Assembly (NCBI GenBank): GCA_963924565.1
Contig: OZ004611.1
Location: 21,018,001 to 21,082,000, forward strand
From: Ascidiella aspersa
Lineage: Eukaryota
Direction of reading: 5' to 3'
Length of the DNA: 64,000 nucleotides
In this document: positions 38,229 to 64,000 of the stretch, piece after piece
Numbering within the stretch: position 1 is the stretch's first letter
How the letters are laid out: the number at the start of each line of letters is the position of its first letter
Notes under the pieces: model-generated
What the model was told of the DNA's origin: nothing
Seen by the model: the letters and a program-made list of their open reading frames with translations, nothing else
Database searches by the model: none
Position numbers and translations under genes: made by a program

Positions 38229-41200
38229 ATGATGACGGAGTACAAGCCGAGCAAGATCTTCGGGATTCCTGGCGAATCTGGTGTTATAAGCATAAATTCA
38301 GACAACATGGTTATTTTCGGCAAGCACGATACACTTCCGATGCTGGCGGTCAAATGCCATATACCAAAGGGCGATGGCACCGACAATATTGAAGGGTATG
38401 ACATTCAACAACAATTCACTGTCTATCGGGAATAAATTTTCACGTGTAATTTGCAGGCTAAAATTTAAAAAAAAAATATTTTTTTAATTACCTTACTTTG
38501 CCTTTTATCCAAATTACCTGACTTGGCTTGCAAAGCAGTTTACTCGTTATACGTTGTATTTCTGTTGTTTGCTGATTCAAATATCGCCCCATGATCCGAT
38601 AAGTTTATCTCGTTTCTTTAGCGTCAAGAATCATGTCGGCCTGTGCCAGCAAATTGACCACAAGAACGCAGTGAAAACCCTGGGTTTCACAACATGGCAA
38701 TCCGGTGCCGCGACCCTGATGAAGTTCGAGCCTGGCACCACTTTAGAAAGCCTCCTGCGAAACGGCGATCGCATGAACCCGGCAGTCAAACTGCAACTGA
38801 TCCGAGACGTCGTAAGCGGAATCAGCCACTTGCACAACCTGTCCGATTACACCCAGGTCACTCACGGCAACATCGAACTAAGCAACATCCTGGTCACTCA
38901 CGATATGCGCTGCAAAATCGCCGGGCTCAGTCACTTACGTGAGTGGGATTTCCGAGAGCAAAGCTGCACAGCGCATGATCTTCAGTCAGCCAAGGAGAAA
39001 GACGTGCACGCCGTCGGCAAGATCATGCACGCAGTGCTGGCGGAAAGCCCTCAAGGAGCGACTTATTTCAACATCGACCAAATCCCGATTCCTGATGGTC
39101 CGAGCGGCGAGGTTATCAAACACCTCAAATCGTTGGCGGTTCAATGCGTTAGCCGAATCCCAACGATGCGACCCGCTGCGCTATATCTCGAACACCAGCT
39201 GATAAGCTTGGAAAAATATTTGAGCGCCAATAAGATGCAGTCATGCTGCTACGAAAGCGTTTTAGGAAGTGTCTTGTTATGTTGTCCGTCCCAAGACCAA
39301 ATGATACAACCGTTAAATAGATACTTCGACGAAGACCTGACAAGTAAGTTAAACTCAATTATCCCGTATAATACAGGAACTAAAATAACTGGAGATCAGT
39401 GACGGCGCATAATCGATATTGGGCGTTATTCGTTAAACCCACACAAAAGTAAATGTAATAAGAATATCAAAGCCCATACAGAAGTAGGTATCAAAGTAGA
39501 TGTGATTCATCCAAGCCAGTGTTAAATTTTTCACAATAAAAATGAATTTAGTGGGATAGCCTTCATTGATGGCCTTACTTAACAAAGTTGCTTGTAAAGT
39601 GGAATATTTTTCCTAATTTCGTATTTTACGAATTGCTGTGTCTGGTATAATTTGTGTATTATGTATATTTTGTGTCTATGTTTAAAGAACAAATATATAT
39701 ATTCGAAAAGTTGAGACAAAGTTACTCATCACAGGGATGTACAATAATATCGCATCGGAGCCGATGCCCGATACCCTTATAAATTTCTTGGTCCAACGAT
39801 AAACAAGATTTCTTATGTGAAAGAAATTTTGCTCATTTACTTATTCGCAAATTATTCCCTTTGTACGTTTCTATTTGATAAATCGTACTTGACAAAAAGA
39901 CATACTTTGGTATCGGATCGAAGCCGTACTTTTGTTCAAAAAATCATGTATCGGCTATGGAATAAAATATACGTGTATCTACGAACTTTAATATTTTGTT
40001 TGGTATACGAAACTAAAGTATTTTCCTTAAAATATGTTTGGTATCGATTAGAGATCGATTATAATTTTTGTAATGCGTATAGCCCAACTGAGCCATGGAC
40101 TTGTGATCTAACCTTTTGAAGCTGTACTGAACATAAACTATACATACCTGATAGGGCCAACTGATTTTCTGTGGCCCATCATACAAATATCTACGCACAG
40201 ATTTAAAAGATATAACCTCTTACTGTTTTCAAGGCCAGGCGTCGGGTTTTTGCAGCGACGATTCCGATCCCGTCTTTGTCGAATCAGACGAAACCTATCC
40301 GAAGTCACCAGTTGGCGATCGAACGCCAAGCAAAAACGGTGAGTTTTTTCTAAGCGAGTTCACAACTTTCTCGCTAAATCGTCTAAACGGTTTACGCAAG
40401 GGGTTTGCAACACTTCACTAGTCGCTGACCATACCTACACTCACAAAGGTACCTGCAGGCCGTACTAAATGTTAACTTATACTTATGTTAAAGCGTGTTT
40501 AGTTTAGGCTTTTACACAACAACTGGAAATCAACCTCGTTTTTTTGCATTTGAAAAATGGTCTAATTAGCCTACATTTAAGAAAGCATGTGCTTGCGTTT
40601 GTTTGGTTTAAATTTCGGGTCAGCGCTACGTCATCCATGATCAAAATGAAAAAGTATAATAGAAATATTTTAGGGAAACGCGATATATTTAATCGTTAAT
40701 CTAGCTTATAGTGTAATTTAAATAGGGCGGTTAAACTTTTGATATTATGTTCATATTTCAAAGACGCAAAAACTGGTGCGCAGCACAACAAAAACATTCA
40801 GATCTAGGTGCCGTACTAAGTTGGCGAAACTTTCTTTGCTGATTGTTTCAGGTTATGTACAGCGCATTTAGGCTGAAAAGCTTCCCTTTAAACGCAAACA
40901 TACCAGATGAATAAATAAGATTCGCGAGAGTTTTTTACGTTTACGTTGTTAGAATAGACAAAAAATATATAGAAAACTCTAGCTTGTCCGGTTTGCAAAA
41001 GAAGTGACGGTCGGTGGGTTGGATGATAGAGTTCAAGCCAAGCGAACAGGATCCTTCCCGCGGGCCGCAGGTTTCCGAACCCTTGGCATTACTGATATTT
41101 TGCGGACCCCAAAAGCACCACAATCCCGGTTTTTCGAACCGCAACTGCCGAAAAAGGATTTTTTTTTTAAATGTAAAATATATTTAGGCTACCCCTTGGG

Positions 41201-44200
41201 ATGCAAAAATGTTTTACGAATTTCCCACATACAGACTTAGTGGTTTGGTATAACTATGTCCTTCTGCATAAAAAGTTACGTTTTTTTCATGTGGTAGGCT
41301 AAATCTCGGTTTGAAAGTTACGAAGTATGGATTATAAAATGGATATAATTTTAAACTGTATGAAGTGCGTCATTTTGAAATACTACGAAATGTTACTGGC
41401 ATATTCAAACGTACAAATTTTAAACATACGCTTTTGAAAAAATGTACATATAGCACGCCTCTATTTATTATTCGTGTCTGCTATGCTATAAAATAAAAAA
41501 AAAAAATATATGTATACTATATAGGCGCTAAACTGTGCAGAGCAAATTAAAAAAAATCAAGTATGGAATAACTGAATTATCACGAAATAGTTGACGTTGC
41601 CGGCTGCAACTTAGTGACGCTCGTGGCAACACCTTACACAGCTTCACGATAAGGTTGTGTTTGTTTTAGACCGACGAAGTCGCGCCGATGCCATCAATGA
41701 AAATCAACAACCTCTCAACAGGCAAAGTGCAAGGTGTGTTTGACTCGCTTAAGATTATTTAAAACAAAACTATTTTTTATGTGTTCAATAAATCAGGGGT
41801 GAGCAACCTACGACTCGCCAATGTAAATTATCTGTCCCGCCGCCTTTTTGACCTACTTGGAAAGACAGGCCATCCGACATATAGTTGGCATATGCTTGCA
41901 TTTTGAATAAATTATTCCAGCCTAAATTAAGTCACCGTGCATACCGTCGATAACTATCAACTTTTTAATTGCCTAAATATCCTAGGCCAGCCTTATAACA
42001 GGTGTCATCATAAAATGATTAATGAAAAAAAAACAAGTTGAGACAACAAAATTGTGCGTGAAACCATAGAATACTAATCACAATTAGTATTCTATGGTGA
42101 AACTTAATTACGGTCCGCGGAGCGGCCGAGACCTTTTTGAATTTGGCGGTTTGTTTTGCTGAAGAATCGGACTCGGGACTCGAGTAAGACGACCAAAAAC
42201 TACCCGAGTCCGACATGCGTATGTGCAGTACGAAATTTTTAAACTGATATTGCTGCCAACTGGAAAAAAGGCGGAATAGCATATGGTGGATATTTTCCGG
42301 CGCTCTTTCACTATTGTACGTGAAAAGTTATGCAAAAAAATAATAATAATAATACCGCATACCACAACGCATATTGTTTGGGTTAGGGTGCGGGTTTGGG
42401 TGAGGGTGGGTCAAGTAATATTATGTTTATTATTAATAATAACTTGACCCACCCTCAACCAAACGCTAACCCGCACCCTAACCCAAGCAATATGTGTTGT
42501 GGTATGCAGCATTTAAAGAAAAATTTTTATCTATTAATTTTTACGTACAATAGTGAAAGAGCGCCTATTTTCCAACCATGTATTGTGAGTAAATGGTTTA
42601 TATGACACCCCTATAAATGGATTGCTGAATATCCACCGATCCAAGTTATTTTAGTTGTGTAAATTGGCAGAATACAGGCTGTAGAGTCAGGGCCGGCGTT
42701 GGGACTCGAGGAAATCGCACATTTGACCTCAGTCGGACTCAGGTTATTTTTAACCGACTCCGCAGCCCTGCCCACCATTGCCATAACTGATGGTATATCG
42801 CCTACATCAGCAGAGAATGTTTGCTGCTCTACACCGATGAACTGCATATTTCCGTCAGCTTATATAAATTACCGTGATCTAAGTAAACACGTCTTATATA
42901 GTAAAATGACCTTCCTCGAGCTTATGTTTAATAGGTTTTCCTACTCATAAAGGTGTTGACCTACGGTTTATTTAGAATTTGTGAAATGTTGGCAGAAACC
43001 ATAATTCGTCAAGCCTGGCAGGCACTTATTCAACCGAGATAAGCAACAATGGGGAAAGTAATCAAGTAGATGAAGGCTCGTACAGTCAATATAGCGGTAA
43101 GAACCCATTTGAATTCGAGTAGTAACAAACTTTTCTGTACGTTAAACAGTACACGAATGTTTAATATAATTTCACAACATGTGGCCATTCAATAATGCAA
43201 AACAAAACGCTCTTCTGAGTTTAATTCGCAAGTATTTGATAACTATAAAACGAAGAATATACGCGCAAAGCGTGAAATGTTTTTTAAATGCATATAGCCT
43301 AGTAAAAGTTGGCAAAAAATATAGTTCAACAGGCTCTTAGAACCACATTTGACACGTGGGCCTTTCCAAGCTGAGCCAATTTAAAAATTCTATGACACAC
43401 CAACTTTTGAAATAGAGTGCCACGATTGCACGGCTATCATGCGGCCCACAACTACATGATAACACTAAACTATTCTACAAAAATAACTCACGGCCCACAA
43501 AAATGGCTCTGCGGCCCACATTTGGGCCGCGGCCTACAGTTTGCCGACCACTGCTTTTACACCATCCTTCTAAGAATTTAATCATAGGTTATTTACTTTT
43601 TTTGTATTTTAGATTTTTTATATTCAAAGGAAATTGTGTTGGGGGATCTCATGCACTTATACGATAGAAGGGTTAAAGTAAACTTAATCACAATAAACTT
43701 TGTTCTTAATGAGAACCTTTCTAAATAAAAAACATAACAGGACTACAAATTATAAAGCGAGCCTCTATGTGCATAAACTTAATGCGAGACTTATCTATCA
43801 CAGAAATAGATCCGCCGCCAGAAGAAACCGTAACCATCAAAAACCAGTAAGATTTTCATATTATTTTTGTTTTCTAATTATCTAAACGTTAGTTATTTTC
43901 AATTCAATTGTTTGTAAATCTTTGATACTGCTAGTATGTTTACAACAAAACCTTGTTTGATATTGCAAAAGTTGTTTTAAAATACCGATTATATGCCATT
44001 TTTTGAATATTGTAATTTAATTTGTAAATTAAAGCACACTGTCGTAGGCCCCGTCAAGTATTGGCAAATACTTTTAAGGATTTTGTTCCAGTATATTTTT
44101 CTTTCTGTAAGCCTATAAATGTAGTTATTTAACAGTAATTAAAGATACTGCGATACTAAAAATGTGACAGTTTACTGAAACAATTTGCCCTGAATATGTT

Positions 44201-47200
44201 ACAAGTTACATAGATTTTAATATAAAAGATGCTGAAGGTAAACTGCAGGCAGGGGTTGAGGGACAACGATTTTGATTTTGTCACATTGTTATGTCATAAC
44301 AGGATCCATGATACATGTAACTTAAAGAAACTATCGTTTTTGAAATGTGCAACTAGATTTTGTCTTCATATACTGGTACTAAAGAAGTTGATGTCGAAAA
44401 GATAGTGTAAAAATGCGTTGATGTAGTTCAAATTGACCAAACGTTTAATTTAGAAGATACTGTGATGCCGTGATCACAAGATCATTATATTTGCACATTA
44501 CTCGATAAACTGGCCTTCATCAATGTGATTTAAGAAAAAAGGTGTGAGATGTTGACCACACAGCTGTACAGAAACTACTATCAAAGTTTGCGCAAAGCGA
44601 GAAAACATACCGGTCATTTACCTAGTTTAAATCTCGAGTTGGATGCCAGTAACATGCGATAAAATGAGCATATAGCAAAGAAGTTTTAGATTCAACCAAA
44701 AGCGCAAAACAAATGGCGTTAATTGGAATTGGCAGAAATTGCGTTTCGACCGAGTATAAGTTCAAGAGGCAATACCAGCTAATATTTAAATTGGCTTGAG
44801 TTGTAATTTAAATTTGGTATATTTACCGAACAATACAGCCACCATAAAACACGAAATTTTCTGCAAAACATATTAAAAGTGACTACAAAAATGCATATAA
44901 AACACACTTTTGAAATTTTGTTTACATAGGTAAAATAGACATAAAGTATAGTTTAAGGGGGTGGCCTCGTTCCTTGCTTTGTGCCAGTTGTAAGTTCAAA
45001 CTTTAAAGGAACTTTAGTATGTTACTTTCCAGAAGCAGCAATGCTCAGACGAAGAAATCCCAGCTACCATCTCAACCTTGTCAGGTATTAGTGTCCTGTT
45101 GTCATTTATATCGGAAGGTACTGTATATACCTACTTATTTCAACCAATATTTGTATCAGATTTAAGTTTAAGTATCATTTGTGTAGCTGGTAAACCGGAA
45201 ATATTGCGATGTTTAGGCCTATGCGAAAGGGCAAAAATATAGTTGTCTATATACATACATATATTCATGTATTTTTAAATGAGGTAAATAAAATGTAAAT
45301 GCACTTTCACGTTAAAGGGTCCCAATGCTCTCGAAAATAAATCAACAACCTAATGTCCAATGCAGTTCAAAAATTAAAACCATTAGGTGTAAACCATGAA
45401 AGATTTATTATTTTTTATTTCACCAGACTCTTAAGAAAGATTCGTGGTCTAGCTGTGAGCTCTATAGTAAATATAACAAAAAAAGGTATGTATTCTATAA
45501 AAAAGCTATGTATACTAGAAGACAAAAGTCTTTACAAGTGAAACTTTTAGTTGATAGCACTAGCAGTATATTTTGAAAGCTTAATTGCAATTAGTTTTAT
45601 TGCTTTGTTATTATAATCTAAAACAATAAATTTCTGTGGTCCCAACTATTTTAAAATCATATTTCTTTATACAGAAAACTAATTGCATGAAATGATAACT
45701 TGTTTGCTGAATATTTGAGAAGTCCCTGAAACATAAATTTTGCGTTTGTGTTGTATAGATCTCAAATCAAAACGGAACCATCACGCAAGCCACGATTCGT
45801 TGATCTGCCTCGCAGGGTATAAACTAACATATATGGGTTTACGTTTGAGCAGATTTCAGAAACATTAGGTCGCGCCCCCTCTACATTAGTATTCCAAACC
45901 CTTGACACTAGTATTTCAAAAACATATACTATGTTTGAAAGTCAATTCTTTCGCTTTTTTTAATATGTAAAATGATCTGCTTTATACATTCAATGTTTTT
46001 AGAATAGTATGCACAGCGCGCAGAAAATACAAAGGGCTGTGTAATATTTTGCTATAGTCAGCTTTTGTTTAAAAAACCTTTTTAGGGGCGCCCCCTACTT
46101 AAAAAAATTAAATTAAAGGGATTTGTTCGTTGCAGCAACTTATACTATAGGCACACAGTTTAATACATCTTCTTACGCACATTCTAAACGTGTAAATTGT
46201 ATTTTTACAGGCAAAATCTTTGTTTGCGAAAACTAATCAACAAGGTGAGTCATATATTTAAAGTAATATTTTCCTATGATTTGCACCCAAAAAAGATTAC
46301 AAATGTTTTGTGGTACGCCCATAACATCATATATAAAACAAGTCAAACTTTTTAATCCACAACATCAATAAATACTAATGTTATAAACATTTCAAGTCCA
46401 ATGAGTTTTGATATACTTGCAACGATATTGATTCAGAAACAGATTGTTATCGCCATTTTGTTTTTTAAGCGACAGTCCGTCGGGGAGTAAATCTACTTAA
46501 TCCATGCTGTTCGTTTTGTTAAGAAAACGTTCAAACCAGCCAGAGAAAGGATCTCTCGTGGGTGACGCTACCGGAGGAACTGTGGCAGTTAAAAAGAAAA
46601 AGAGGTTTGTGACAAAATAGTTTCAGTTGATCTCTGTTGGGTAACGATGGCAGTCTTGTATTTTTTTCGGTAAAAAGAGTGACACGGAAAAAATCATAAT
46701 TTATTCTTGAAAAATCACAGTGTGTAGAACAATTTCTGAAATTTGTTCGCCCGTTTGTGATCTCCCTCTATTATAGTAAACTGTGCGCCATTGATAAAAA
46801 CCCAAAACAGGAATATTCATGCAGGATGACTCCGGGTATGGGTCTACAGAAAATCGATCGGCCATTCATAGATTTCTACACATGGTAACGCAAGTAAAAA
46901 ATAACCTGTGGTGAGACCCTGAAGTCCTCAGGCTAATCGGCCCTAACTTGTTTATTCAAGGGTTTTCGAAAGCTTTCCCGCATTCGGGTTGTTACCTCGT
47001 TATTTTTATAGAAACAACATCGTCAAGTCCGCCACTTTCGAGTGGCGGCGTGGCGAAAAATCTGCGCGAAAAAAACGCCAAGGGTCTGCAAAACCAAAAT
47101 TTTAATTCGGCGATGGAATGGTGTCGAAAAATGTGGCGGGAATGCGTGCAGAAAAGCGAACCTTCATGCTGCCGGGGCCTCAGAATGTTTGCAAACCAGC

Positions 47201-48022
47201 TTGGCGACAAAGGCGAAATTTACGACGCGATGCTTCTACTTGTTCTCGCCCTTCGACTCACTTTGGCCATTCAAAAGGCTGAAACGAGATACGGTGAAAT
47301 CGAGAAGTGTTCCGTTGACCTCGTGTATCTCGCCAAAAACCTTGGTCAACCTCTCGTGGTGAACTACCTTCTGCCTTTGGTGGAGGAAATCGGAAATGAT
47401 GTAACGGATGACGTCGAACCCTTCTTCAACTTTACTTTAAGTACTTTGGAGTACTTTTCCGGAGAATACCGGCAAGCTAAAGGTGATTTAAATGGTGCAT
47501 GATGTTTATGAGAGCGCGATGTAATTTAATTTGCAAAATTGCTTAATGCTGTTATGTGTAACCTTTGAAGCCAAGATGTGCATCTCAGCCTTGCTGAAGT
47601 AGGGGTTTCAAGGATTAGGTTGAGAAGTTGCGTGGTAGGTTATGTGTGTATCTGCTTGGCCGCTGAAAACAGTCACGCCTAAACCTGTGTCGTATGAGAT
47701 AGATGAGAACGTTTTTAATCGAGGCTGACTTTTTCGCGTGCATTTTCTAGCTCTGCTCGAGAAAGCGGTTGCTGGCTTGACGCAGCGACACCAGTTAACA
47801 TACAACACCCAAGGCCTTTGCAAGTTCTTTCTTGGCTGTCTGTATATGCGAGACGATACTGACGTCAAGATGTTCGGCAAGGCCATTGCCAGCTTTGAAG
47901 AAGCGAAGCTGGTTTTTGAGAAAAGCAGGAGCACCGTCGACCAAAATCTTTGCTCTCGGGCAATCGAGCAAATAAACATCCGAAAGCAACTGCTGAAATT
48001 AAGTGAAGAGTACATGTTTTAG
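38229..48022 (+). CDS. Pseudokinase (RIPK/TKL-like) + low-complexity linker + TPR-like helical domain protein, paralog A (about 705 aa minimal model)
   Basis: Phase-consistent exons: 38229-38395, 38622-39343, 40234-40338, 41670-41733, 42996-43096, 43804-43846, 45759-45816, 46211-46244, 46524-46604, 47012-47482, 47751-48022 (a further exon is possible at 45033-45084). Kinase motifs LAVK, HKNAVKTLG, HGNIELSNIL, KIAGLS, MRP. Exon phases and motifs mirror paralog B. The kinase and helical exons are solid; the linker exons are less certain. Confidence 0.7.
42281..42579. repeat. About 300-bp palindromic foldback element nested in other repeats
   Basis: ggcgctctttcactattgtacgt..gggttagggtgcgggtt..gagggtgggtcaagt is mirrored by acttgacccaccctc..aacccgcaccctaaccc..acgtacaatagtgaaagagcgcc. 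Confidence 0.85.
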
Positions 48023-49487
48023 GAAAAGTCTAAAAAAGTCATTTATACATAAACCAGGCAATAAAATATTTTACCAACTTGTGTTTATACTTTAAATGCG
48101 TAAATTTCGTTTACCATTTTAATATGTTTGTTCTCATGTGAATATATTTTTAGAGCCAGATTGCAACGTGCTTAATCAGTCGTTATACTTTCTAAACTAA
48201 AAGTTACACCAACTTAATCGAGTAAATGCAAGTTTACCTTATTTGTAAGTATTGTTGTATTTAAAATGTGATCCGAGCACCGAAGGTAATCCGCGTGGAC
48301 TGGATATTGTGTCGTAATTCACGCTTCACCTGTATTCATCTTTCTCAATTTGAACTTTCATTTGTGCTCTTTTGTATATTAAGTAAAATAATGCAGATAC
48401 GGGGTAAATGGTCCCTCCAACGTACACGTTTTGCCAAATCATAAACTCAAAACGTCGAGCGATGTGCGAATACTTTCAGGTGTTAAATGTGTCACGTCTT
48501 CCTCAACTTTAACATTTTTGCCAACGTAATCCAAATAAACGCCATTTTTTCCCGCTTTGCAAGTAGTTTTTTTTTGTTTCATATCTTTGAATGTATGTCG
48601 ATTCGATTTCCGCACGAGAACGAACGCTAACGTAATAAATTTAGGACCGGTATCTTGCAATGCCTGCTTCAAGAACTTTTGACATTATAAGCTCTTTTAG
48701 GACTGAATCTTGCAATCCCAGGCATACCTGTGAATAGCAATGTGCGCTATTTTGAAACCCACGTATTTTTGCCTATTGCCCCAAACTATATTGTTTTTAA
48801 CATATGGCTATTGTATTATGCATATCAACTTTGAAAACAAGATAAACATAATCACAAGAAACACTTTTTGGTTTCTAAACATACAGCTGTGAATTCAATA
48901 GCCCTCGCAACGTGTTTGTCAAAATCATTTGGAAAAATGACTTTACAATAATAACTGTTCAAGTTTGTTGTGTTCCCGGATACCTCTCATCACCTGCACC
49001 CGCTGTATCATACATTTTTTCGTCCTTTGAAAACATACTATTTTTTCAAGAAATTGATAACTGGATGTTAAGTCATGATAGTGAACGAGTCCAGTGGTCG
49101 CTTGCAGCATCCACAATAATTTTAGCATCCATGCTTATCTCAGAGTAAAAAAGGTCATTCAAAACTTTGCCTATTAAAAGAAAAGCTTCTAATCAGTCTA
49201 AAGCTAGTGTTGGTAGTTCTGCTTTAAAGAATACTACTACTTGCTTTGTTAAGATTTGTACCAAGATCCCCCTCAAACGAATTTGGACCAAAAAGTAGTA
49301 AATGTAAAGATGTGTTCAATGAACCATATTCTGACTATTCTGAACATGGGTACGTCGCTTGTGAAATGCAGTTTGCGATAGACGATGTTTTGTTTAAATT
49401 TAAAAAAAGTTATTTTGGTATTTGTTTCACTTCTATTAATTTGGTAGCATATGAGAAATATTAGGTCAGCTAATGCACAGCCTAGAC

Positions 49488-54151: not shown

Positions 54152-57100
54152 TTAGATTTTTCCGGACATAGTGTACTTCTCGCGGAGCTCTTTCAGCTTT
54201 AGTTGGCAAATCCTTATTTCCCCTTTGAGTTTGATTTGCTCGATTGCCTGACAGCAAAGCTCACCGTCCTTGCTGCAGTTTTGGGTCTGGTAGGCGAGCA
54301 TTGCATCTTTCACGCTCTGCAAGGCCTTGCGAGCTTGGTCCAGGTTGTCGGGCTGAGCCGCCGACATGTACAGACAGCCCTGGAAGAACCTGCAGTGGCC
54401 GAAGGCTCTGCATTTGAACTGTAGCTGCGGGTCCAGGTCATCTTCAAGTTTGACGACCGCCTGCATCAGAGTACCTTGGCAAAGAGCAAAATAAGGTTGC
54501 GCGACAAAGGACACTTTGCATGCAAGCGGCACTTTTTTGTGGTATTCTTTAGCATGACCTTAGTTTTAGTGCAAACAAAATTTGCAGCTCCTTAAAAAAT
54601 ATTGAAAAGTCACCATAAATGATATTTTGAATCGCAGCTGCTTTATTGAGCTGCATGTTGTCAACTTATACGAAAAGGTTATTTTGCCGTGAATGAACGT
54701 CGCGCTTTTGCATTATAACAAAAGGTGCACACTTTAAAATGACGTTTTTTGGTCTATAGTGTCTATACCAGGGATGGTTTACCACGGCACGCCAATCAAT
54801 TCAACGCTCATGTTATATCACAGTGGTTCTCAAAGTATGGGTCGCGACCCAAACGTGGGTCGCGCAGGGTCAAAAAATGGGTCGCTCTATGATGATTCAA
54901 TCCTGCACAAACGGACTTTTTTCATTTCATTTTTTTTAATATTTTCAATGCAATCATAACTGAGTTGTTGCAACATAAGCTTTCCACGTGACTTCGAATC
55001 TGTAACGTGGATTATTGCACCATAAGTGGTTTTATGAACGTTTGACAGCCAACTACAGTAGCTGCTAAGACTGGTGTAAGCTTTTAGTCACCAAACAAGC
55101 CACGCTGACATTATAAAGGAAAAAGTCAGTTTCACCAATCACACTAAAATAAATCAATCATTTGTTTGTAATCAATCATTGTTCCATAGAACTGTGTACT
55201 ACATCTGGTTGTCGGGGTCTTTTTCTATTTCATGCATATCGGAAAAAGTACATTTTTTGTTGTTTGAGACTTGGGTCGTGAGTTGCTTATAAAACTCAGA
55301 TTTGGGTCGCGCTTAAAAAGTTTAAGAACCACTGTTATATCACCTTACGAAAGTACAACATTTCATCACTACTACATAATTAATTAATTTAATATTACAT
55401 CACTAACACTAGCGCTAACTAAATGGTTTAACACATTTCCAGCTCGTGTCACGAATATGTGTCTTAACTGTTGTATTCAACATTATTTTTTGAGTGCGTT
55501 AAACTTGTTGTTTAACGACTAACCGTTCGTATTACGTCACAATGCCCCAAAAGTGGCGTGACGCTTACTGCGTTAATGCAGGGCATTCCACAGTACATTA
55601 GTGGTTCTCAACCGCCGGTTCGCGTCAACTTTCCTACCGGTCCGTGAAATATGTTACAATTTTATATCTTAATTGCAAAATGCAAGATGTTGAAGGCTGC
55701 TTGTCCATCAAATTTAGAACTTCGCCAGTTCCGTAATTTGCAGCCTTGTGACGTAAATAGAGTTAATGATATTATTTGGACTTCATTGTACGTCACAATG
55801 CTCCAGTGTTTAAAATTAGGCTACAACTCGTTTAAGTCTTAAACTTTAAGAACAGTTGTACGTGAAAAACTTCCATAGAACCATGTATAACACGTATGAT
55901 ATCAAAAAGACAGCAGCGAATTGCTCATTACATTGAAGTTTCCGTTATTTGCTTTTAAGTTGCATACTTTTGTCGTTTTTTTAGTTTTTTGGTGATTTTA
56001 ATTTTTGAAGGTCCACCGGTCCGCAAAATTTGTTTTGAAATTTTATCGGTCCGTATGCTAAAAAGGTTGAGAACCACTGTTCTACGTTACAATCAAGCAC
56101 GTGTGTTTTTTCGCGACTGAGAGACCAACTAAAAGCGAAAGTTATAGCTAACATTTCTAGGTATCGGCTGAAAAACATTGAAGTATATTCCAAAAAAGAT
56201 AGGTAAATTAGATGTCAGATCACAGGGCTGCAGAGTCGGACTCGGGACTCAAATCCGACGTGTGCGCATGCGCACGACAAAATTTCGAAACTGATAAGCC
56301 AGAAAACTGTAACCCTGGTTTGCCAGTGCAAAACTAAACATAGAAAAATGTTTGGCACGCGAGTTGTTGATATTTTGACAGTATTCATAAACTGGCACAC
56401 TGAGTACAAAAGGTTGCCGACCCCTGGTCTATACCTTCGGATTTTGAGTGATCCTTGGAGAAATACTCGAGGATGCCGACGGTGTAGCTATAGAGGAAAT
56501 TGTACATTGGATCACAGTCACTGGTTTCCCGTTTCATTTGCAGCAACGAAGGCAGGAGGTAGTTTTTCACCAACGCGGGATTAGAAGCGTCCAGGTCCTT
56601 GACTAGGTACAGGAGGTCGCCTGAACACTTTTCTACCTCCTCCTGGTGGTACTCGATCGGTCGGGCGAGCGAGGAAAGGCGAAAGGCGAACACAAGCAAG
56701 AGTACAGCGTCGTAAATCGCCCCCTGCTCGCCCAGACGGTTCGCGTAGAGTCGCAGGTTGGTCGAGCTACACGCGTTGCTCTTCTGCACGCACTCGCACC
56801 ACATTTTCTCGCGTGTTTTTCCAGCATTTGCAAAACTGCCCTGGACGAGTTCCTTGGAATGGCGTTTGAGCAGCTTCGCCACCGCGCCGCTATTCGCAAA
56901 GCTCGGTGCAATGGAGGTCGTTTCTAGCAAGGGCGAAAAAATAAATTATTTCCAATTAGTTATTCTACTGTTCAATCTGATAAACCATCTATAGTTGTTT
57001 GTTTGTCATTTATTCCAACTAAACGCCACTGGAAACAGCATTTCCATTTAATTTGAAAAATTTTCTGCACATTTTATTGCGTATGAGTAAATACTCATTT

Positions 57101-60100
57101 TATTTAGTATTTGAACCATATAAACCAGTGGTTTTTAACTAGGGGTTCAGCGCGATGTTTTCTGAAACATTAACTCACAGCCTACCTGAAGCTCCATCAA
57201 TTATTTTTTACCAGTCCAAAGTTGGTTGTTATAAGAAGCAACTACGTAAATAAATTATTTGACACTGATCGTATATCTTTATTGTTGAATAATTGACTCA
57301 TATCCCGGATTCTCACTATTGGTCGCGGAAAAAACACAAAATTATGCGCATTTAAATGTTGTGTATTACATATATTTGCATTAAATATGATGAATTTCCT
57401 GTTTTTGTGACCGAGCGAAATGTTGGGGTTTAACAAAAGTTATATGAATGACGTAGGGGGTTAAATTAGCAAAGGTTAAAAACTACTGATATAAACGGAA
57501 ATTAAACATGAACATAACTGTATGCGAATTAGTTACCAACCTCTCTTCTTTTTAAGAAAAGACAATTCTTTTGGAAGCTCTTCCCACGAGCAACATTTGG
57601 GTTTATTCTTGCTGAGAGCGTTTCCTTTAAAAAGAAATAGCGTCACCCTCAAACAACATACTCTTATTAAAACGGTTTAATTTTAAACTGTACATTTTCA
57701 TATCCCATAACTTAAACAGGTAAACATTTTTCGGAAATTAACTCACGTCTTTGTAGCTCATTGGGCCTTGGAGGAACCTTAGGTTTTTTGCCTGCAAAAA
57801 AAGCATTCTAACAAACAATTTATTTAAAAGCTTAGTACAGTGGTTCCCAACCGCTTAATGCTTGCATATGCTATCAGGACTGTAAAATAGACTGCGGCAC
57901 CCTTAGCCTACTGGAATAAGTTGTAATGTCACAATAAACGCATCAACACTTCACAATGCAGGAAATCGAATTTCATTTACTGAACTCAACTCGCACACAA
58001 AGAATTGTAAGCGGCTTAACAATTAAGCAAAACACAGGTTCTTAAAAATTCCCAAATATCTCTCGTAAATTTAAATCTTAGAAATTATTTTTTTTTATGA
58101 ATTACTTTTTCTCAAGTTCTTTTAGACAACAGAGACCACAAAGCGCTAAAAATATGTCCACCGGTTTCGCATTATTATGGAACTACATTTGGATCTTTGT
58201 TTCCATTGTCTTACCGCGACACAACATAAATAATAATAATCAGTAACACTCGCCGCTACGGAAAAAATGGTATACTTCGCCACAATAAAAAGGTGGTTTT
58301 TAAAATCTAACCAGAATACCTACCGTCGCCAACCGAGTTAGAATGACTTGGTGTTGCACTCTTCGTCTGTTTTGTAAAAAAACATAACTTAACTTTACAC
58401 CAATGCATAACTATAGTATTGCATAATGCCACCGCGTGGCATATTGAGATCAAACCATGTATAAACCATACAAAGTATTTAATTTAGCTCTAACATAACA
58501 AATTAAAGAAACAAGTTTATCGCACTCAGTACTAAATTAAGTCAGCAAGAAAGTCTACCTGCTTTTAAAAACAGGAAAATATTAAGTGAAAAATTCGTTG
58601 TTCCTACAGAGTATTTTTGGCTATTATTTTAGTCGGTCTTACAAATAAAAATGTTCGCAGAATGGTTGGTTTGGTTTAAGCTGAGTTGTTGTTCAACGAT
58701 TTGAAGTTAAGGATTGTCAAGGATGTAAAAATACTTTATTAACAAAATACAAATGCACATAAAAATAATATATTGCGTCCAAAATTAAAGTGTAGCCATC
58801 TGCTGACAGAACGTTAAATGATCTAGCCTACACGGATTTTACCGATCGAAGTAAGGGTTTTTCAGGCGGTGTGTATGACGCAGGTTCAGTTTCGCTGCGT
58901 GTCCTGTAATTTAAAATTATACCTTTTGTTAAAAATCTCGTTCAGTGTTGCTAAATTAAATATTATATTGAATAATCTATGTGGGCAAGCAAGATTGACA
59001 GTTAAGTCAATAAATGCAAAATGGAAAAGTCCATTAAAAGAAGAAAACACAATTGCTGAAATGTTTTTAACACAATCGTGTACATTGTACAACATTACAG
59101 CAGTTGTAACAACATCTAAAAAACATAACATAAATCAAAGAAAGACTGACGACCTATACAATTGTATTTCAGCTTTATTGCTTTATTTAATTGTTCTTTA
59201 GTTCTTCACCCTAAAGTCGTTGCTAAAATACTGGCTATGATGAATTTATGTTTGCAACTCACATTCGGCCAATAAACTTTAATATCATACAGAATACCCT
59301 ATGTTACATGCCTATTGGCATTTTGTATTGCCTTCATAATTGATCGGGATTGGACTTACAGTTATTTCCTTTTGGGACTCACAAGAGTTACATAAGGGCT
59401 CACTATAGAGTATCTTAACTTGGCCCACAAAAGACCTTCTGAGTTATCGATTTGTACTGTAAAAAAACTGCGCTGCGATATCTGCAAGCGGAATCTGCTA
59501 TGCCTATTAGTTTACTTGCTCCGCTGATATATGGCTTGAAACTTGTCGTTCGTTTATGAACTAATACAATTCTGATCACCTTAGCTTAGCCCAGTGGTTC
59601 TCAACCGGGATTCTAATGCTCAAGGGTGCCGAGAGATATTTGAGAATCTTAAAAAATCTGATTTTTGCTCAATTCTTACAAATTTTTTTGTAAAGATTAG
59701 ATGGGAATAAATCCAATTATAACTTCCTACGTTGTGAAGAGTTGGTGTGTGTTGTTCGCCGTTCGTTATTGTGTCATTCTAGCAAATTACCTACGGAAAA
59801 ATCTTGTAGGGCTGCCGCAATCCATTTGTTATTTCTGCGGTGTGCCGCCAGCCATAAAGTGTTGAGAAACGCTACCTTAGCCTATTGTGGTTGGCTTGCG
59901 TGTTTGACGCGCAGTCTGAGACTGGAGTTTAACAGAAGGCGTCAATTGGAACGCCCGTCTATTGAATCAACAATATAATTCCATAGGCGTAGCCAGGGGG
60001 GCTGAGGGGTTATGGCCCCCACCCAAAAAAATTATAAATATTTTTCTCTTAATAATTTGTTTTTTCGCTTTATGAGCAGTATCAAAACAGTCGATCACAA

Positions 60101-63100
60101 GCATGCCACACCTTCAATTGTCATGAACTGTTACGCCACAAATGATGTAGTTATTATTACGTTTGCTATACATTAAAGTAGTTTTAGTACTTCAAGTCAG
60201 TTTTTGCTCTTTGAATGGTTTTTCAGTATTGCGTTAACACTCAGTCAGTTGCTGCTCGAAACGGTTTGCTAGCATTGTTATTGTGTTCGATACGGCGGTT
60301 AATACAATGACAAAAGCTAAACAAAAAAGTTCAAATTTTTGGCCCCCCAAAAAAATATTCGGCTGGCTACGCCGCTGTATAGTTCACCAAACTGAACTCG
60401 AGCCCCACTGCGCTTGGCAGAAAACAATTTTAGCGTATTTTTATGTTGTATGAAATAATACGAACTGACAGTAGGTACTAATATATATATATTTTTTGGG
60501 AGTAATATTAGCTAATCAGCAGTGCAAGCAATGTGTTGGGTTTTTACCAAAAATCTCTCTTCCTAAAAAAAAACGTTTTTATTACGAAGAAAGGGTTTTG
60601 TAAAAAAAAATCAACCCAATAACCCTCTGAAGACCGTCGAAATTAACAACATTAAAGATATGGTTAAAATACAAATATTCCTCTACAAGCCCACCTTTCG
60701 TTATTACACGTCAGTTGATTTTCGCTGATGAGAGGGAGGCGCGACGGATCTTCATACAGACGAGGCTAAAACAATGAAAATACATAGGTAGCTGAGTTAT
60801 GAAATACTATATTCGGGCTGTTTTCTTCCTTTTCACTAAACATGAAACTCAAGTCGTCAACATCCGTTGAACAATTCCATGGCGCCACGATCTTTTTCTT
60901 TATGCCATAAGCCAGGGGTGTCGAACATGTGGCACGCGTGCCAATAAAAAATGGCACGCAAGCTTATCAAATATACTAAATTTGTTATTTAGCCAATTGT
61001 CAAAAAATGCTAAATTTGTTATTCAGCTTTTTTTTCAGCGATTTGCTACTGTTTATTCACAATATAAAACAATCGCGGCAATCACGACAATTAACGATTA
61101 CTTCTAATATCAGCAAAATAATCTAGCAAATCTAGCAATTCAGGTGAGACACATTTACCAGATCTTAAAAGATCAGGAACTAAGGTCGACATTTATCTTG
61201 CAAGGGTCAAGGTGATTTCTATTATTCACATATTCAGTGCAACATTACTTCTAATATTATAGCATTATGCTGTAGTGGAGGATAGCATTCACATAGTTAT
61301 ATATAGCTTGGTTTAAAGTAGAAAAAGCCAGCTCACCAATGATTACTTAGATCTAGTAATGCACATTTCTACTACGCAGCTTAAGGCCAATCTATTTTTA
61401 GAGTCTGGCCCATGTTTTTCATGTGAAAACGTTTTTATTTTTTTGCAAAAAAGCTCTTTTACGATTAAAACGAATTAGTTACGAAATTGTGGCACAGGAA
61501 TAAGTTATAAGATAAAAATTGGCACCCAAGCATGTTTGAGTTGGACACCCCGGCGTCCGCCTTCCGCACAGTAAAACGTAACTTATTTTGTGCCTGTATA
61601 GCCAAAATATACCTGTGAGTCGTGCATATCGGATTGGAGAAAAGATGAAGAACCAGATTCCCGACTACGATCATATACAGCTCTACACAAAAAACAGTTA
61701 ACATGTTTTTTAATATGACCAAAGATCAGAGCCTAATCTATTTACAAATATTTTCTATAAAAGCATTTGATTTTACGGTTTTACATTTTTTTTTTTACTG
61801 TAATGGTCGTATCTGATCGTTAAGCTTCCCTTTTTAATGATTTGGCATAAAAAGCAATCAATTTATTCTATTGTAACGCCGAGTATTATATAACTTACTG
61901 TCTCGACATTTTTGACTAATATATCAAACGATATTACATTCATTTATTTATGTTTATCTTGCTGCAGTACGTTACATCTTTGAAGTATTTTTCTATCGAA
62001 TACAACTTGAATTATACTTACTCTGATCCATCCGTTTGCAGTTTGATATCTGCAACACAAAATGAATGTTTTGTGCGCACGACTCCCACAACGCATTGGA
62101 ATTTCTTGACAATTTTAACTAACACCCGGTATGATTGTTAAATAAATTGTTCGATTTATCGAAAGTTCTGGCTAATATAACTAGTTTAACCTTTCGTACA
62201 TCGTTTATGACGCTAAACGAAAAAACAACACTCAAAAAATGGGAGGTTGATTGTAAAAGCCACAACTCGCCATTTATATTGAAATTGATTGTATACAACC
62301 CGTCGCCCTTAAAATAAACAATCTTTGCAAATAAATCGAGGACACACAGATTCGAACGGCAGCCTATATTGCTGCTTTTTTGACACAGATTGATTTTTAC
62401 TGTGATTTAAATACACTCTAACCTATTTCTTACCCTCATACTGGTGATTAAGGTGCGAACCAGATGGGAGGCATCTTTTTTGCCGATCACTGCAAACCGG
62501 CTGAGTTCTGACCATCTCCACCGGACAGCTAATTTCAATTTCGTAATCTAAATTTGGGAGGATTCCTGTATTTGATGACTGACTCCTATAAAGAGATAGG
62601 TTTAAGTTAAGCAAAATGTGCTAGAGAACGTAGTCTTTAACTTAGGCGTTAGTGGTAATGGGTAAGTCTTGGTTGTGCTATAACGTGATTGGATTTGGTT
62701 TGAATAGGAGTTATACCAGCGTCTCTTAATCGGTGTGCCATGAAAAGTTGCCAGGTGTGCCCCGTGAAAATTGGAAATAATATAAAAAATATTAATATAT
62801 TATTGTTATTATTTTTTACTATGTCTTCCAGCTTAGGTCATTGTACAGTGAATATTATAAAGAATATGCAACTATGAGGCCAATGTTATAATAACTTACA
62901 AGAAATTTAAGAGAACTATCGCTAAAATTAAAAAAAAAGTTGATGTGCCATTTCTAATGCTCAAGGATGCCGGGAGATATTTGAGAATCTTTAAAAATCT
63001 AATTTTTGATTACCTCTTCCAGTTTTTTATGTAAGATTAGAGTGGAATACGTCCAATTATAACTTGCTACGTTGTTTAGAGTCGATGTGTGTTGTTCCAG

Positions 63101-64000
63101 TTCCGTTTATTTTGGCACTAGTGAATTACCTACGTTCTTGTAGTAATTCTTGTAGGGTTGCCGCAATCGATTTATCATTTCTGAGGGATACCGCTAGCCA
63201 TAAAAGGCTGAGAAACACCGGGCCAAGGGTTGGATTAATGTCAACTGACCTTTGCGTTTTATGATCTCTTTGTTTGATGCGCTGATGGTCTTCATGATTG
63301 GCAGGAACAACTCTCTGTCGAAATCCTGAAATGATGGACAGTCGTACAAAATGTATACGTTGGCTAATTTTTGGTATGCTTCTGTACTTACCATTTTCCG
63401 TTGGCATCCGAGGTGTCTCGTATCGATTTGGATCAGAAGAGTGATTTCGGTTGCGCACTTTTGCTCGAGGGGCGACCACTAACTTCGGATTTGTCTCATC
63501 TGACTTATCAAAACAAGAGTTGACATCATCGTAGTAGTCCAAATCCAGTGTACGATCTAATTTACAGAATCGCATTTATGACCAAAGTATGGTTAGACCA
63601 AGTTCGAAAAAGTGCCTAATTATAATATAATTATATAATTATTGATCAGCCAGATTAATAAATAAAATAAGCATCTGCAGAAAACCCACTTGGCTCGTCG
63701 ACGCACGCATCCAACGATTCGAGCGTTTGGCCTTGGAAGACATCAATTGGCCATGGGCACAGACCATCGAAAGAGCCTCCGAGGCAAGTAGACACCTGGT
63801 TTCTACCAACGTGGTTCATCAGGGCCTGTAGCTGTTGTTTGAGATGCCAGGCTGTGGGTCGTAATTTAGGCAGATCGCTCAGGCACTGTTCCACGGCCGT
63901 TTTGAGGTATTTGATGATAAGTTGCCGTTTGCTGTCGTCCGAAGTCGGAAGATCGGCAACGTCCGAATCCGCCGAAGGCCTTCGACCGATTACCACGGCG
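54152..64000 (-). CDS. Kinase-fold + Tyr-motif linker + TPR-like helical domain protein, paralog B (5' end beyond the window)
   Basis: Phase-consistent exons: >64000-63690, 63556-63392, 63325-63250, 62585-62434, 62049-62022, 61682-61613, 60765-60710, 59402-59360, 58366-58324, 57791-57747, 57624-57541, 56923-56435, 54474-54152. Homology to paralog A: IKYLKTAVEQCLSDLPKLRP vs IKHLKSLAVQCVSRIPTMRP; SDETNPK vs SDETYPK; SWEELPKEL vs SWVTLPEEL; KMWCECVQKS vs KMWRECVQKS; GCLYM; AIEQI. Confidence 0.75.
54769..56426. mobile_element. Composite hAT-type element with nested MITEs (54821-55334, 55599-56079)
   Basis: Ends CAGGGATGGTTTACC / GGTTGCCGACCCCTG; perfect TSD GTCTATAC. The inner element 54821-55334 has its own perfect TSD TTATATCA. 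Confidence 0.8.
57126..57488. mobile_element. hAT-type MITE
   Basis: TIRs CAGTGGTTTTTAAC / GTTAAAAACTACTG; perfect TSD ATATAAAC. Confidence 0.85.
59592..59874. mobile_element. hAT-type MITE (longer relative at 62717-63220)
   Basis: CAGTGGTTCTCAAC / GTTGAGAAACGCTA ends; TSD GCTTAGCC / CCTTAGCC; internal sequence from ttctaatgctcaagg onward is shared with 62952-63220. Confidence 0.75.
60913..61551. mobile_element. hAT-type MITE
   Basis: Ends CAGGGGTGTCGAAC / GTTGGACACCCCG; sub-terminal TGGCAC motifs; no clean TSD. Confidence 0.55.
62717..63220. mobile_element. hAT-type MITE
   Basis: Degenerate TIRs; homologous to 59592-59874. Confidence 0.6.

What the first reader, a model, noticed from the sequence alone, without database searches (positions are those of the whole stretch)
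38229..64000. Convergent pair of genes with an unfamiliar pseudokinase - Tyr-motif linker - TPR-like architecture
Seen: ORFs that look like four separate genes can be joined into two. Both kinase exons end at an equivalent phase-1 donor (DEDLT|, DEP|). They connect through 7-10 small phase-compatible exons with recognisable inter-paralog homology to the same two helical-domain exons (YFSGEYRQAKALLEKAV, GLCKFFLGCLYM, AIASFEEAK are TPR-like). The copies face tail-to-tail about 6 kb apart, indicating an old inverted duplication. Inference: a lineage-specific signalling scaffold family, possibly innate-immune, related to RIPK/TKL kinases but with a TPR-like domain in place of a death domain, CARD or ankyrin repeats. 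The paralogs might work as a pair.
Basis: partly seen in the sequence, partly recalled or inferred. Interest (0 to 1): 0.75.

Follow-up and report, generated by a model that had tools for sequence, protein, structure and literature searches.

The report
Paired pseudokinase genes with TPR tails
Two neighbouring sea-squirt genes most likely each encode a catalytically dead RIP-like kinase joined by a flexible linker to a TPR-like helical tail; they are divergent members of a large, unstudied kinase-TPR gene family in this genome, and neither their expression nor their splicing has yet been seen in RNA.

Summary
The observation largely holds. Two tail-to-tail paralogs each have two kinase exons, a conserved first and last linker exon, and two helical exons. 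Their splice phases give one open frame. Both kinases lack the Gly-loop, the alphaC Glu, the HxD Asp and DFG, so both are pseudokinases.

The architecture is not unique. The nearest kinase exons in this genome are active-looking and RIPK-like, and each is followed on the same strand by one TPR_12-type terminal exon. That held for 19 of 20 chromosome-3 TPR places and for 6 of 6 nearest paralogs elsewhere. The first helical exon (H1) is homologous to the front two-thirds of that exon (hhalign 90.8%, E 1.2e-6). A family HMM built without A or B picks the two H1 exons as the top 2 of 1,203 window frames.

The link for the second helical exon (H2) is weak. Gene models from Clavelina lepadiformis fuse a related kinase to a related helical tail.

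The scan noted this kinase-TPR family before, on other DNA of this genome (s1-793404). The one RNA lay, on gene B, showed no reads on its exons, so the one-transcript claim rests on structure and comparison.

The parts
38229..38395 (+). Gene A kinase exon K1: start codon, degenerate Gly-loop, retained beta3 Lys; phase-2 donor
   Evidence: 49% identical to B's K1
38622..39343 (+). Gene A kinase exon K2: HGN in place of HxD, GLS in place of DFG; donor CAA|GTAAGT, phase 1
   Evidence: (PK_Tyr_Ser-Thr, E 3.6e-10)
40234..40338 (+). Gene A linker exon L1, phase 1-1, acidic and Ser/Pro-rich
   Evidence: homologous to B's L1
41670..41733 (+). Gene A candidate linker exon (phase 1 to 2); weak, unverified
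44587..44648 (+). Gene A candidate linker exon (phase 2 to 1) resembling the start of B's L3; poor splice scores, unverified
46524..46604 (+). Gene A last linker exon (Llast), phase 1-1, no Met, ends in KRKR
47012..47482 (+). Gene A helical exon H1, phase 1-1; homologous to the front two-thirds of the family TPR exon
47751..48022 (+). Gene A terminal helical exon H2 with stop codon; AATAAA at 48060-48065
   Evidence: weak link to the family; no HMM support
54152..54474 (-). Gene B terminal helical exon H2 with stop codon; AATAAA at 54123-54118
56435..56923 (-). Gene B helical exon H1, phase 1-1
57541..57624 (-). Gene B last linker exon (Llast), phase 1-1
62434..62585 (-). Gene B candidate linker exon L3 (phase 2 to 1) with strong splice signals
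63250..63325 (-). Gene B candidate linker exon L2 (phase 1 to 2); its 3' end abuts a high-copy repeat
63392..63556 (-). Gene B linker exon L1, phase 1-1
63690..64000 (-). Gene B kinase exon K2, 3' part only. The exon runs to window-equivalent 64474, and K1 lies about 7.5 kb beyond the window at L003 8449-8604. HGS in place of HxD, GLS in place of DFG.

Best explanation
Genes A and B are two old, inverted-duplicate paralogs. Each most likely encodes one protein of roughly 600-700 residues with three parts: an N-terminal RIPK-like pseudokinase (exons K1 and K2), a probably disordered acidic and basic linker made of several small exons, and a C-terminal TPR-like helical domain (exons H1 and H2).

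They are divergent, catalytically dead members of a sea-squirt gene family with dozens of copies. In that family an active-looking RIPK-like kinase is joined to a TPR domain of about 245 residues.

Shown here: paralogy, loss of the catalytic motifs, a gene structure shared with the family, homology of H1 to the family TPR exon, and the TPR fold of that exon.

Inferred: that kinase and tail lie on one transcript, and that the proteins act as non-catalytic scaffolds or regulators. In that reading the TPR groove holds a peptide ligand or partner, and the dead kinase domain acts as a docking or allosteric module, perhaps towards active relatives. Plant BSK scaffolds and other pseudokinases work this way.
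For: Gene structure:
- The K1|K2 intron (phase 2, just before ...VK(N/D)xVG) sits at the same site in A, B and family members.
- The K2 donor is phase 1 at the homologous ...L-x-x-F/Y-x-x-x end in A, B and L016.
- The tail acceptor is phase 1 with the same split codon G|AA in A, B and L016.
- L1 directly follows K2, and Llast directly precedes H1. Both are conserved between the paralogs, phase 1-1 and without a Met. K2-L1-...-Llast-H1-H2 therefore stays in frame in both genes.

Family context:
- The A K2 exon gives 65 matches in the own genome.
- 19 of 20 chromosome-3 TPR_12 places with open frames of 118-295 aa have such a kinase exon 2.7-14.7 kb upstream on the same strand.
- 6 of 6 nearest paralogs on C9, C5 and C2 carry a family TPR exon downstream.

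Homology of the tail:
- H1 profile against a diverse family alignment: probability 90.8%, E 1.2e-6, 132 colinear columns.
- A family HMM built without A or B ranks B-H1 (E 1.5e-5) and A-H1 (E 5.6e-5) first among 1,203 six-frame pieces of the window; the next piece scores E 0.68.
- The L046 exon bridges the two groups: E 1.8e-5 to the H1 profile and E 2.5e-20 to the chromosome-3 profile.

Fold:
- The family exon model has pLDDT 89.7 and 12 helices. Its best PDB matches are the TPR domains of LGN, KLC1 and sNASP.
- The H1-only model has 7-8 helices, with weak KLC TPR matches.

Pseudokinase status:
- The Gly-loop glycines are lost and the beta3 Lys is kept.
- alphaC Glu is H in A and Q in B. HGD is HGN in A and HGS in B. 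KPEN is ELSN in A and TPGN in B. DFG is GLS in both.

Lineage and constraint:
- An active paralog hits RIPK2, RIPK4 and RIPK1 best in the PDB.
- A and B are sisters (100/100 support) on a stem of 2.2 substitutions per site. Every identified exon is nevertheless open in both copies.

Cross-species evidence:
- Three Clavelina lepadiformis models (one submitter annotation, two RefSeq isoforms) join a 35-39% identical kinase, through a Ser-rich linker, to a helical tail.
- That tail matches the family profile: hhalign E 7.5e-5, and 23.6 bits against a best of 10.2 bits among 1000 shuffles.
Against: - No RNA supports any junction. In the single RNA lay (gene B, window 57771-63770, about 6% of run X5 read) the bins covering the K2 end and L1 had zero depth. 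All substantial depth lay on repeats, and no splice-like joint was reported.
- The interior linker exons are unresolved, and A's candidates are weak.
- The link from H2 to the family's C-terminal TPR part is weak. hhalign gave E 0.0095 at 4% probability. A plain HMM did not score A's H2, and ranked B's H2 189th against 1000 shuffles, of which about 860 sequences in all were scored. Pfam finds no TPR in H1 or H2.
- The two Ciona intestinalis isoforms of a related kinase both end exactly at the K2 exon boundary. Kinase-only products therefore exist in the wider lineage.
- A conserved Met inside H1 (...KMW...) could in principle start a tail-only protein.
- The H1 profile found no relative among 1.84 billion representative proteins. 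The Clavelina link comes through the family profile only. Against the chromosome-3 profile one of 1000 shuffles nearly equalled it (20.8 against 19.7 bits).
- The functional mechanism is inference only.
Confidence: 0.7

Rival explanations
1. Each copy is two separate genes: a short kinase-only gene ending just after K2, and a tail-only gene (Llast, H1, H2 plus an unseen first exon). They would be linked only because they were duplicated together.
For: - No RNA junction was seen.
- The A K2 frame runs on for 19 codons to a stop at 39400-39402.
- The Ciona relatives end at exactly this boundary.
- The interior linker exons are unresolved.
Against: - L1 follows K2 with consensus splice sites and is conserved between the paralogs.
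- Llast and H1 begin at phase-1 acceptors and have no Met before the conserved region.
- Kinase followed by TPR is colinear in 19 of 20 and 6 of 6 family loci.
- The Clavelina models fuse the two parts.
Confidence: 0.13
2. The two genes are decaying relics, transcribed little or not at all, left over from the kinase-TPR expansion.
For: - Zero RNA depth on gene B's exons in the sample read.
- All catalytic motifs are lost.
- The stem branch is very long.
- TPR motifs can no longer be recognised by Pfam.
Against: - K1, K2, L1, Llast, H1 and H2 are all open, with usable splice sites, in both copies, despite 0.75-1.0 substitutions per site since they split.
- The degenerate motifs are shared by both copies (GLS, HG-N/S). 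The dead state therefore predates the duplication and has been kept since.
- Only about 6% of one RNA run was read, and only for gene B.
Confidence: 0.08
3. The kinase domains are atypical but still active enzymes, like WNK or CASK, so these are signalling kinases rather than scaffolds.
For: The beta3 Lys and the catalytic-loop Asn are retained in both.
Against: Four separate elements are lost together in both copies: the Gly-loop, the alphaC Glu, the catalytic Asp and the DFG Asp.
Confidence: 0.05

Closest known systems
The unnamed kinase-TPR gene family of this sea-squirt genome (also noted by this scan as s1-793404), e.g. L016 on chromosome 3 and L046 on chromosome 5
   Same: - Same exon plan: K1|K2 phase-2 intron, phase-1 K2 donor, phase 1-1 linker exons, and a phase-1 G|AA acceptor of the tail.
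- Same kinase lineage.
- H1 is homologous to the family TPR exon.
   Different: - Family members keep GxGxxG, HGD and DFG and look active. A and B have lost them.
- The family tail is one exon of about 245 residues that passes Pfam TPR_12 in 3 of the 5 members I scanned. In A and B the tail is split by a phase-1 intron and no longer matches Pfam.
- The linker is Ser/Thr-rich in L016 but acidic and basic with some Tyr in A and B.
Vertebrate RIP kinases (RIPK1-4)
   Same: They are the best solved-structure relatives of the family's kinase domain: RIPK2, RIPK4 and RIPK1 at E about 6e-19. RIPK1 is also among the weak hits of gene A itself. The general plan is the same: an N-terminal kinase, an intermediate region and a C-terminal interaction domain.
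   Different: - No death domain, CARD or ankyrin repeats were found (Pfam). No RHIM core was found in the linker frames.
- The tail is TPR-like.
- A and B are catalytically dead.
- A RIPK survey (PMC9573974, passages read with the find mode) does not contain the words Ciona, tunicate or TPR.
Plant BSK proteins (RLCK-XII; kinase or pseudokinase with a C-terminal TPR domain, proposed scaffolds)
   Same: The order of parts is the same: a TKL-group kinase-like domain followed by a C-terminal TPR. The BSK3 paper proposes a scaffold role, and its reference list cites BSK8 as a pseudokinase (PMC6336344, passages read).
   Different: This is an analogy only. No specific sequence relationship was tested or seen: the nearest PDB hits are Eph, LIMK, RIPK and plant RLKs in general, not BSK. 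The linker is different, and BSK membrane anchoring has no counterpart tested here.
Kinases with an N-terminal TPR domain (BUB1, BUBR1, MPS1)
   Same: They combine a TPR domain with a kinase or pseudokinase in one protein. I saw only titles and abstracts in the search listing.
   Different: The domain order is reversed, the kinase group is unrelated, and their function is at the kinetochore.

Membership tests
Sea-squirt RIPK-like kinase-TPR family (unnamed; defined here from own-genome loci) | Kinase exons whose closest relatives are the family's kinase exons, with the same K1|K2 intron site and phase | tested here: met
   The nearest own-genome matches to A's K2 are family loci. The phase-2 intron lies before VK(N/D)xVG in A, B and L016. 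In the tree, A plus B fall among family members, but their placement has weak support (40/92).
Sea-squirt RIPK-like kinase-TPR family (unnamed; defined here from own-genome loci) | A terminal helical domain homologous to the family's TPR exon, downstream on the same strand | tested here: met
   H1: hhalign probability 90.8%, E 1.2e-6. The family HMM ranks the two H1 exons first and second of 1,203 window pieces. L046 is an intermediate sequence. H2 alone is inconclusive.
Sea-squirt RIPK-like kinase-TPR family (unnamed; defined here from own-genome loci) | Kinase and tail on one transcript | tested here: inconclusive
   The phases and flanking linker exons fit. The Clavelina models are fused. 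The RNA lay showed no reads on gene B's exons.
Active eukaryotic protein kinase | Gly-rich loop, beta3 Lys paired with alphaC Glu, HxD catalytic Asp, DFG Asp | tested here: not met
   Only the beta3 Lys and the catalytic-loop Asn are kept. The Gly-loop, alphaC Glu, HxD Asp and DFG are lost in both genes.
RIP kinases (RIPK1-5) | RIPK-type kinase domain | tested here: inconclusive
   An active family paralog hits RIPK2, RIPK4 and RIPK1 best. Gene A itself hits Eph, LIMK, plant RLKs and RIPK1 at E 1e-5 to 1e-3. No tree with RIPK outgroups was built.
RIP kinases (RIPK1-5) | C-terminal death domain, CARD, RHIM or ankyrin repeats | tested here: not met
   Pfam finds none of these in the exons scanned. 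No credible RHIM core was found in any linker frame.
Canonical TPR repeats (Pfam TPR clan) | A match to a TPR profile at the curated threshold | tested here: not met
   H1 and H2 of both genes give no TPR hit. The TPR reading is indirect. It rests on homology of H1 to family exons that pass TPR_12 (L046 42.4 bits, L023 34.9, L016 32.7, against a cut-off of 30.1), on fold matches and on language-model neighbours.
Plant BSK / RLCK-XII | Specific sequence relationship of the kinase and TPR domains to BSKs | not tested
   This is an architectural analogy taken from passages of PMC6336344. No BSK appears among the PDB hits listed.

The most novel reading that the evidence does not exclude
A and B are dedicated 'dead' partners of the active kinase-TPR proteins. 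The idea is a chordate counterpart of pseudokinase decoy or adaptor logic, as with MLKL and RIPK3 or plant ZED1/RKS1 with ZAR1. A catalytically silent RIPK-like domain would be docked or modified by active relatives or by pathogen factors, and the TPR tail would couple that event to an effector. The family would then be a lineage-specific intracellular surveillance system with built-in regulatory pseudokinases.
Probability: 0.12. Interest if true: 0.75.

Novelty: new variant of a known kind. Interest (0 to 1): 0.45.

Why it matters
RIP-type kinases are central switches of inflammation and cell death in vertebrates, and their pre-vertebrate history is poorly mapped. This locus shows that a sea squirt has built a large family on a different plan, a RIPK-like kinase plus a TPR tail. 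It also shows that one old branch of that family gave up catalysis and yet kept both copies intact, which is the pattern of regulatory pseudokinases.

In four searches of the held paper library I found no paper describing an animal RIPK-like kinase with a C-terminal TPR domain. The interest lies mostly in the family. This pair adds the pseudokinase branch and a split-exon version of the tail. It is also a warning for annotation: gene finders would probably report four orphan fragments here.

Tried and rejected
Searches and tests that led nowhere:
- H1 profile (A plus B) against 1.84 billion representative proteins. There was one weak hit, P0001, an RNI-type LRR_6 protein matched seven times on a short 'N-x-L-G-D-x-G' stretch. 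I treat this as chance or motif convergence.
- Word-index search with A's K2 exon: 190 candidates, none significant. Only proteins of 132-420 aa were eligible.
- Search with the tail of the Clavelina protein: it found only itself.
- RNA test. I laid gene B (window 57771-63770) because its kinase-to-tail distance is the shorter one. A 6,000-letter stretch from just inside K2 covers most of that interval, but stops about 850 bases short of H1. No reads fell on the exons, so the test was uninformative. Traces of reads in 7 of 17 single-copy bins all had the first mate on the + strand. However, 706 of the 721 reads laid were only partly on the stretch, mostly next to repeats, so I draw nothing from them.
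- Ab initio search for phase-compatible linker exons, using a generic splice-score matrix that I wrote from general knowledge, not one trained on this genome. It recovers L1 and Llast and B's L2 and L3, but does not give 7-10 exons.
- The tblastn match A 42165-42212 / B 62700-62653 was rejected. The A candidate has a phase-0 acceptor that does not fit, and B has no acceptor there.
- RHIM core scan of the linker frames: one hit, inside a repeat in gene B. Rejected.
- H1 and H2 against the chromosome-3-only profile: E 0.037 and 0.079, too weak. The link for H1 became clear only with a more diverse family alignment.
- H2 against the family HMM: no support.
- Clavelina protein against the H1 profile: only a spurious 16-residue match.
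- Findings look-ups by sequence came back blank.
- The own genome is not C. lepadiformis. The best identity to its protein is 38-43% over long matches.
- I opened no supplementary files. The tables of the RIPK survey (PMC9573974) that list invertebrate homologs might hold tunicate entries I did not see.

Step left out on instruction: I never joined exons into a spliced protein for any search or fold. All searches and both folds used single exons, or single-exon natural relatives.


Full report
WHAT IS THERE

The window is AT-rich, intron-bearing animal DNA. Earlier notes of this scan call the genome a sea squirt.

Gene A lies on the + strand.
- It starts at the ATG at 38229.
- Exon K1 (38229-38395) ends at a phase-2 donor.
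- Exon K2 (38622-39343) ends at a consensus donor CAA|GTAAGT in phase 1, right after ...DEDLT.
- About 7.7 kb downstream, exon H1 (47012-47482) begins at a good acceptor in phase 1 and ends at a phase-1 donor.
- Exon H2 (47751-48022) ends in a stop, followed by AATAAA at 48060.

Gene B is the mirror image on the - strand.
- Its K2 donor lies at 63690 (phase 1, after ...DEP).
- H1 is 56923-56435 and H2 is 54474-54152, with AATAAA at 54123.
- B continues beyond the window. K2 reaches window-equivalent 64474. K1 lies about 7 kb further on (L003 8449-8604) and is 49% identical to A's K1.

The two stop codons face each other 6.1 kb apart.

PARALOGY AND CHANCE

- H1: 41% identity, E 1e-40.
- H2: 37%, E 2e-12.
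- Kinase: 54% in the N-terminal part and 33-34% in the C-lobe.
- H1 has only these two copies in the 308-Mb genome.

These matches are far beyond chance.

ONE GENE OR TWO?

Two linker exons are conserved between the paralogs, have usable splice sites and are phase 1-1.
- L1 directly follows K2: A 40234-40338, B 63556-63392, tblastn E 0.002-0.003.
- Llast directly precedes H1: A 46524-46604, B 57624-57541, E about 1e-4.

Neither Llast nor the conserved start of H1 contains a Met, so the tail needs upstream coding exons. Because K2 ends in phase 1 and L1, Llast and H1 are all phase 1, the chain stays in frame in both genes whatever lies between.

B has two further well-signalled candidates whose phases fit each other: L2 63325-63250 (phase 1 to 2) and L3 62585-62434 (phase 2 to 1). 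A's counterparts are weak.

The bins over the K2 end and L1 had zero depth. All substantial depth lay on high-copy repeats, and no splice-like joint appeared. Expression and splicing therefore remain untested, not refuted.

On instruction I never joined exons for a search or a fold.

THE FAMILY CONTEXT CHANGES THE READING

A's K2 exon finds 65 matches in the own genome. Independently, Pfam TPR_12 finds many places.

I took the 20 chromosome-3 TPR_12 places whose open frames are 118-295 aa. I set aside 6 chromosome-3 rows with frames of 543 aa or more, and the 74 rows on other chromosomes. Of those 20 places, 19 have one of these kinase exons 2.7-14.7 kb upstream on the same strand. All 6 of the nearest kinase paralogs outside chromosome 3 (C9 twice, C5 twice, C2 twice) also carry the same type of terminal exon downstream, at E 2e-7 to 5e-51 against the chromosome-3 profile.

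These relatives look like active kinases: GxGxxG, VAIK, HGD and DFG are all present. They share A and B's exon plan: the same phase-2 K1|K2 intron, a phase-1 K2 donor at the homologous position, a phase 1-1 linker exon, and a phase-1 tail acceptor with the same split codon G|AA.

This is the kinase-TPR family that the scan noted before, on another piece of this genome (s1-793404).

IS THE A/B TAIL THE SAME DOMAIN?

Pairwise BLAST and the chromosome-3-only profile gave only hints. Three further results settle it for H1.
- With a more diverse family alignment (9 exons from four chromosomes, A and B excluded), hhalign gives H1 a probability of 90.8%, E 1.2e-6, over 132 colinear columns.
- An HMM of that alignment, run against all 1,203 stop-free pieces of at least 30 aa in six frames of the window, ranks B-H1 (E 1.5e-5) and A-H1 (E 5.6e-5) first and second. 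The third piece scores E 0.68.
- One paralog 1.1 Mb away on the same chromosome (L046) bridges both groups.

H2 aligns to the family's C-terminal part only weakly: hhalign E 0.0095 at 4% probability. It has no plain-HMM support. Its assignment rests on its position, its phase and its terminal-exon status.

FOLD

- The family exon (L046, 9-sequence alignment) folds with pLDDT 89.7 and pTM 0.85 into 12 helices.
- Its best PDB matches are TPR domains and TPR-like proteins: LGN at E 5.9e-4, KLC1, sNASP and 14-3-3.
- Three of five family exons scanned pass Pfam TPR_12.
- The H1-only model is weaker (pLDDT 64, 7-8 helices). It has KLC TPR domains among its top matches, but none at E 0.001 or better.
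- Language-model neighbours of H1 are TPR clusters. Those of H2 are mostly unnamed. I treat these as leads only.
- Pfam sees no TPR in H1 or H2 themselves.

PSEUDOKINASE STATUS

In alignments with active relatives, A and B differ as follows.
- They lack all the Gly-loop glycines.
- They keep the beta3 Lys.
- alphaC Glu is H in A and Q in B.
- HGD is HGN in A and HGS in B.
- KPEN is ELSN in A and TPGN in B.
- DFG is GLS in both.

Because the changes are shared, catalysis was lost before the duplication.

In a 20-row tree, A and B are sisters (100/100 support) on a stem of 2.2 substitutions per site, with terminal branches of 0.75 and 1.0. Their exact place among family members is unresolved (40/92), and the tool flagged long-branch effects. 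Every identified exon is still open in both copies, which argues for continued constraint.

KINASE LINEAGE

An active paralog's best solved relatives are RIPK2, RIPK4 and RIPK1 (E about 6e-19), followed by BIK1, RIPK3 and TAK1. Gene A itself gives only weak hits to Eph, LIMK, plant RLKs and RIPK1.

No death domain, CARD or ankyrin repeats were found, and no RHIM.

OTHER SPECIES

The best public relatives of a family kinase are these.
- P0002: an unnamed assembly protein, kinase only.
- P0003: from Clavelina lepadiformis, 588 aa.
- P0004: from Ciona intestinalis, 441 aa.

The Clavelina gene has three concordant models: one submitter annotation and two RefSeq isoforms of 587 and 590 aa. All join the kinase, through a Ser-rich linker, to a helical tail. 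That tail matches the family profile at hhalign E 7.5e-5. It scores 23.6 bits against a best of 10.2 among 1000 shuffles. Against the chromosome-3 profile, however, one shuffle nearly tied it. These are predictions, not cDNAs.

Both Ciona isoforms end exactly at the K2 exon boundary. Kinase-only relatives therefore exist.

The own genome is a different species from Clavelina, at 38-43% identity.

LITERATURE

Four searches of the held library turned up no paper describing an animal RIPK-like kinase with a TPR tail.
- A comparative RIPK paper (PMC9573974, passages read) lists amphioxus LRR-, DEATH- and SH3-type combinations. It does not contain the words Ciona, tunicate or TPR.
- Plant BSKs (PMC6336344, passages read) are the closest architectural analogue: a kinase-like domain plus a C-terminal TPR, proposed as scaffolds.
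- For BUB1, BUBR1 and MPS1, which carry an N-terminal TPR, I saw only search listings.

VERDICT

But the architecture is the common plan of a large family in this genome, already noted by the scan. What is particular to this locus:
- an old, inverted pair of catalytically dead members;
- a tail split by an intron and diverged beyond Pfam recognition.

That kinase and tail lie on one transcript is probable (about 0.8) but unproven. A scaffold or regulatory role is inference. An immune role and pair-wise action are speculation.

Noticed in passing
window 59571-61570 and 62771-63370: High-copy dispersed repeats sit inside gene B's linker introns. DNA word depth reaches more than a thousand times the single-copy level. 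RNA reads fall on both strands. A pair of 83-86% identical direct copies lies at 59611-59757 and 62952-63097. These look like expressed transposon families. One of them abuts candidate exon L2.
   Followed up: partly
window 42299-42565: Inverted repeat with 110-nt arms (80% complementary, 47 nt apart) inside gene A's linker interval. It looks like a MITE.
   Followed up: no
G000 chromosome 3, about 32.66-38.35 Mb: Dense tandem arrays of kinase-TPR genes, with near-identical neighbours (e.g. 36.90, 37.06 and 37.15 Mb) and a regular kinase-to-TPR spacing of about 4.4 kb. One TPR place (38353770) has no listed kinase upstream.
   Followed up: partly
P0004 / P0073 (Ciona intestinalis LOC104266030): Both RefSeq isoforms of this related kinase end exactly where exon K2 ends in A, B and the family (...DQFQQSS). 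This could be a true kinase-only relative, or a model that misses downstream exons.
   Followed up: no
P0075 (Clavelina lepadiformis LOC143468728), residues 497-590: The annotated protein stops at family-profile position of about 176, close to where H1 ends in A and B. This hints at a shared intron there, with the models reading into it or lacking a last exon.
   Followed up: no
window 47150-47220 (H1 residues 47-70): The stretch ...LRMFANQLGDKGEIY... matched seven repeats of an RNI-type LRR_6 protein (P0001) at a whole-library E of 2e-4. This is probably motif resemblance only.
   Followed up: partly
L003 2390-2761 (about 2.4-2.8 kb beyond the window's right edge, inside gene B's K1-K2 intron): An open frame with an internal repeat (...NLGLIP(V/M)NLGLIP...) lies on the - strand. 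It is unexplained.
   Followed up: no
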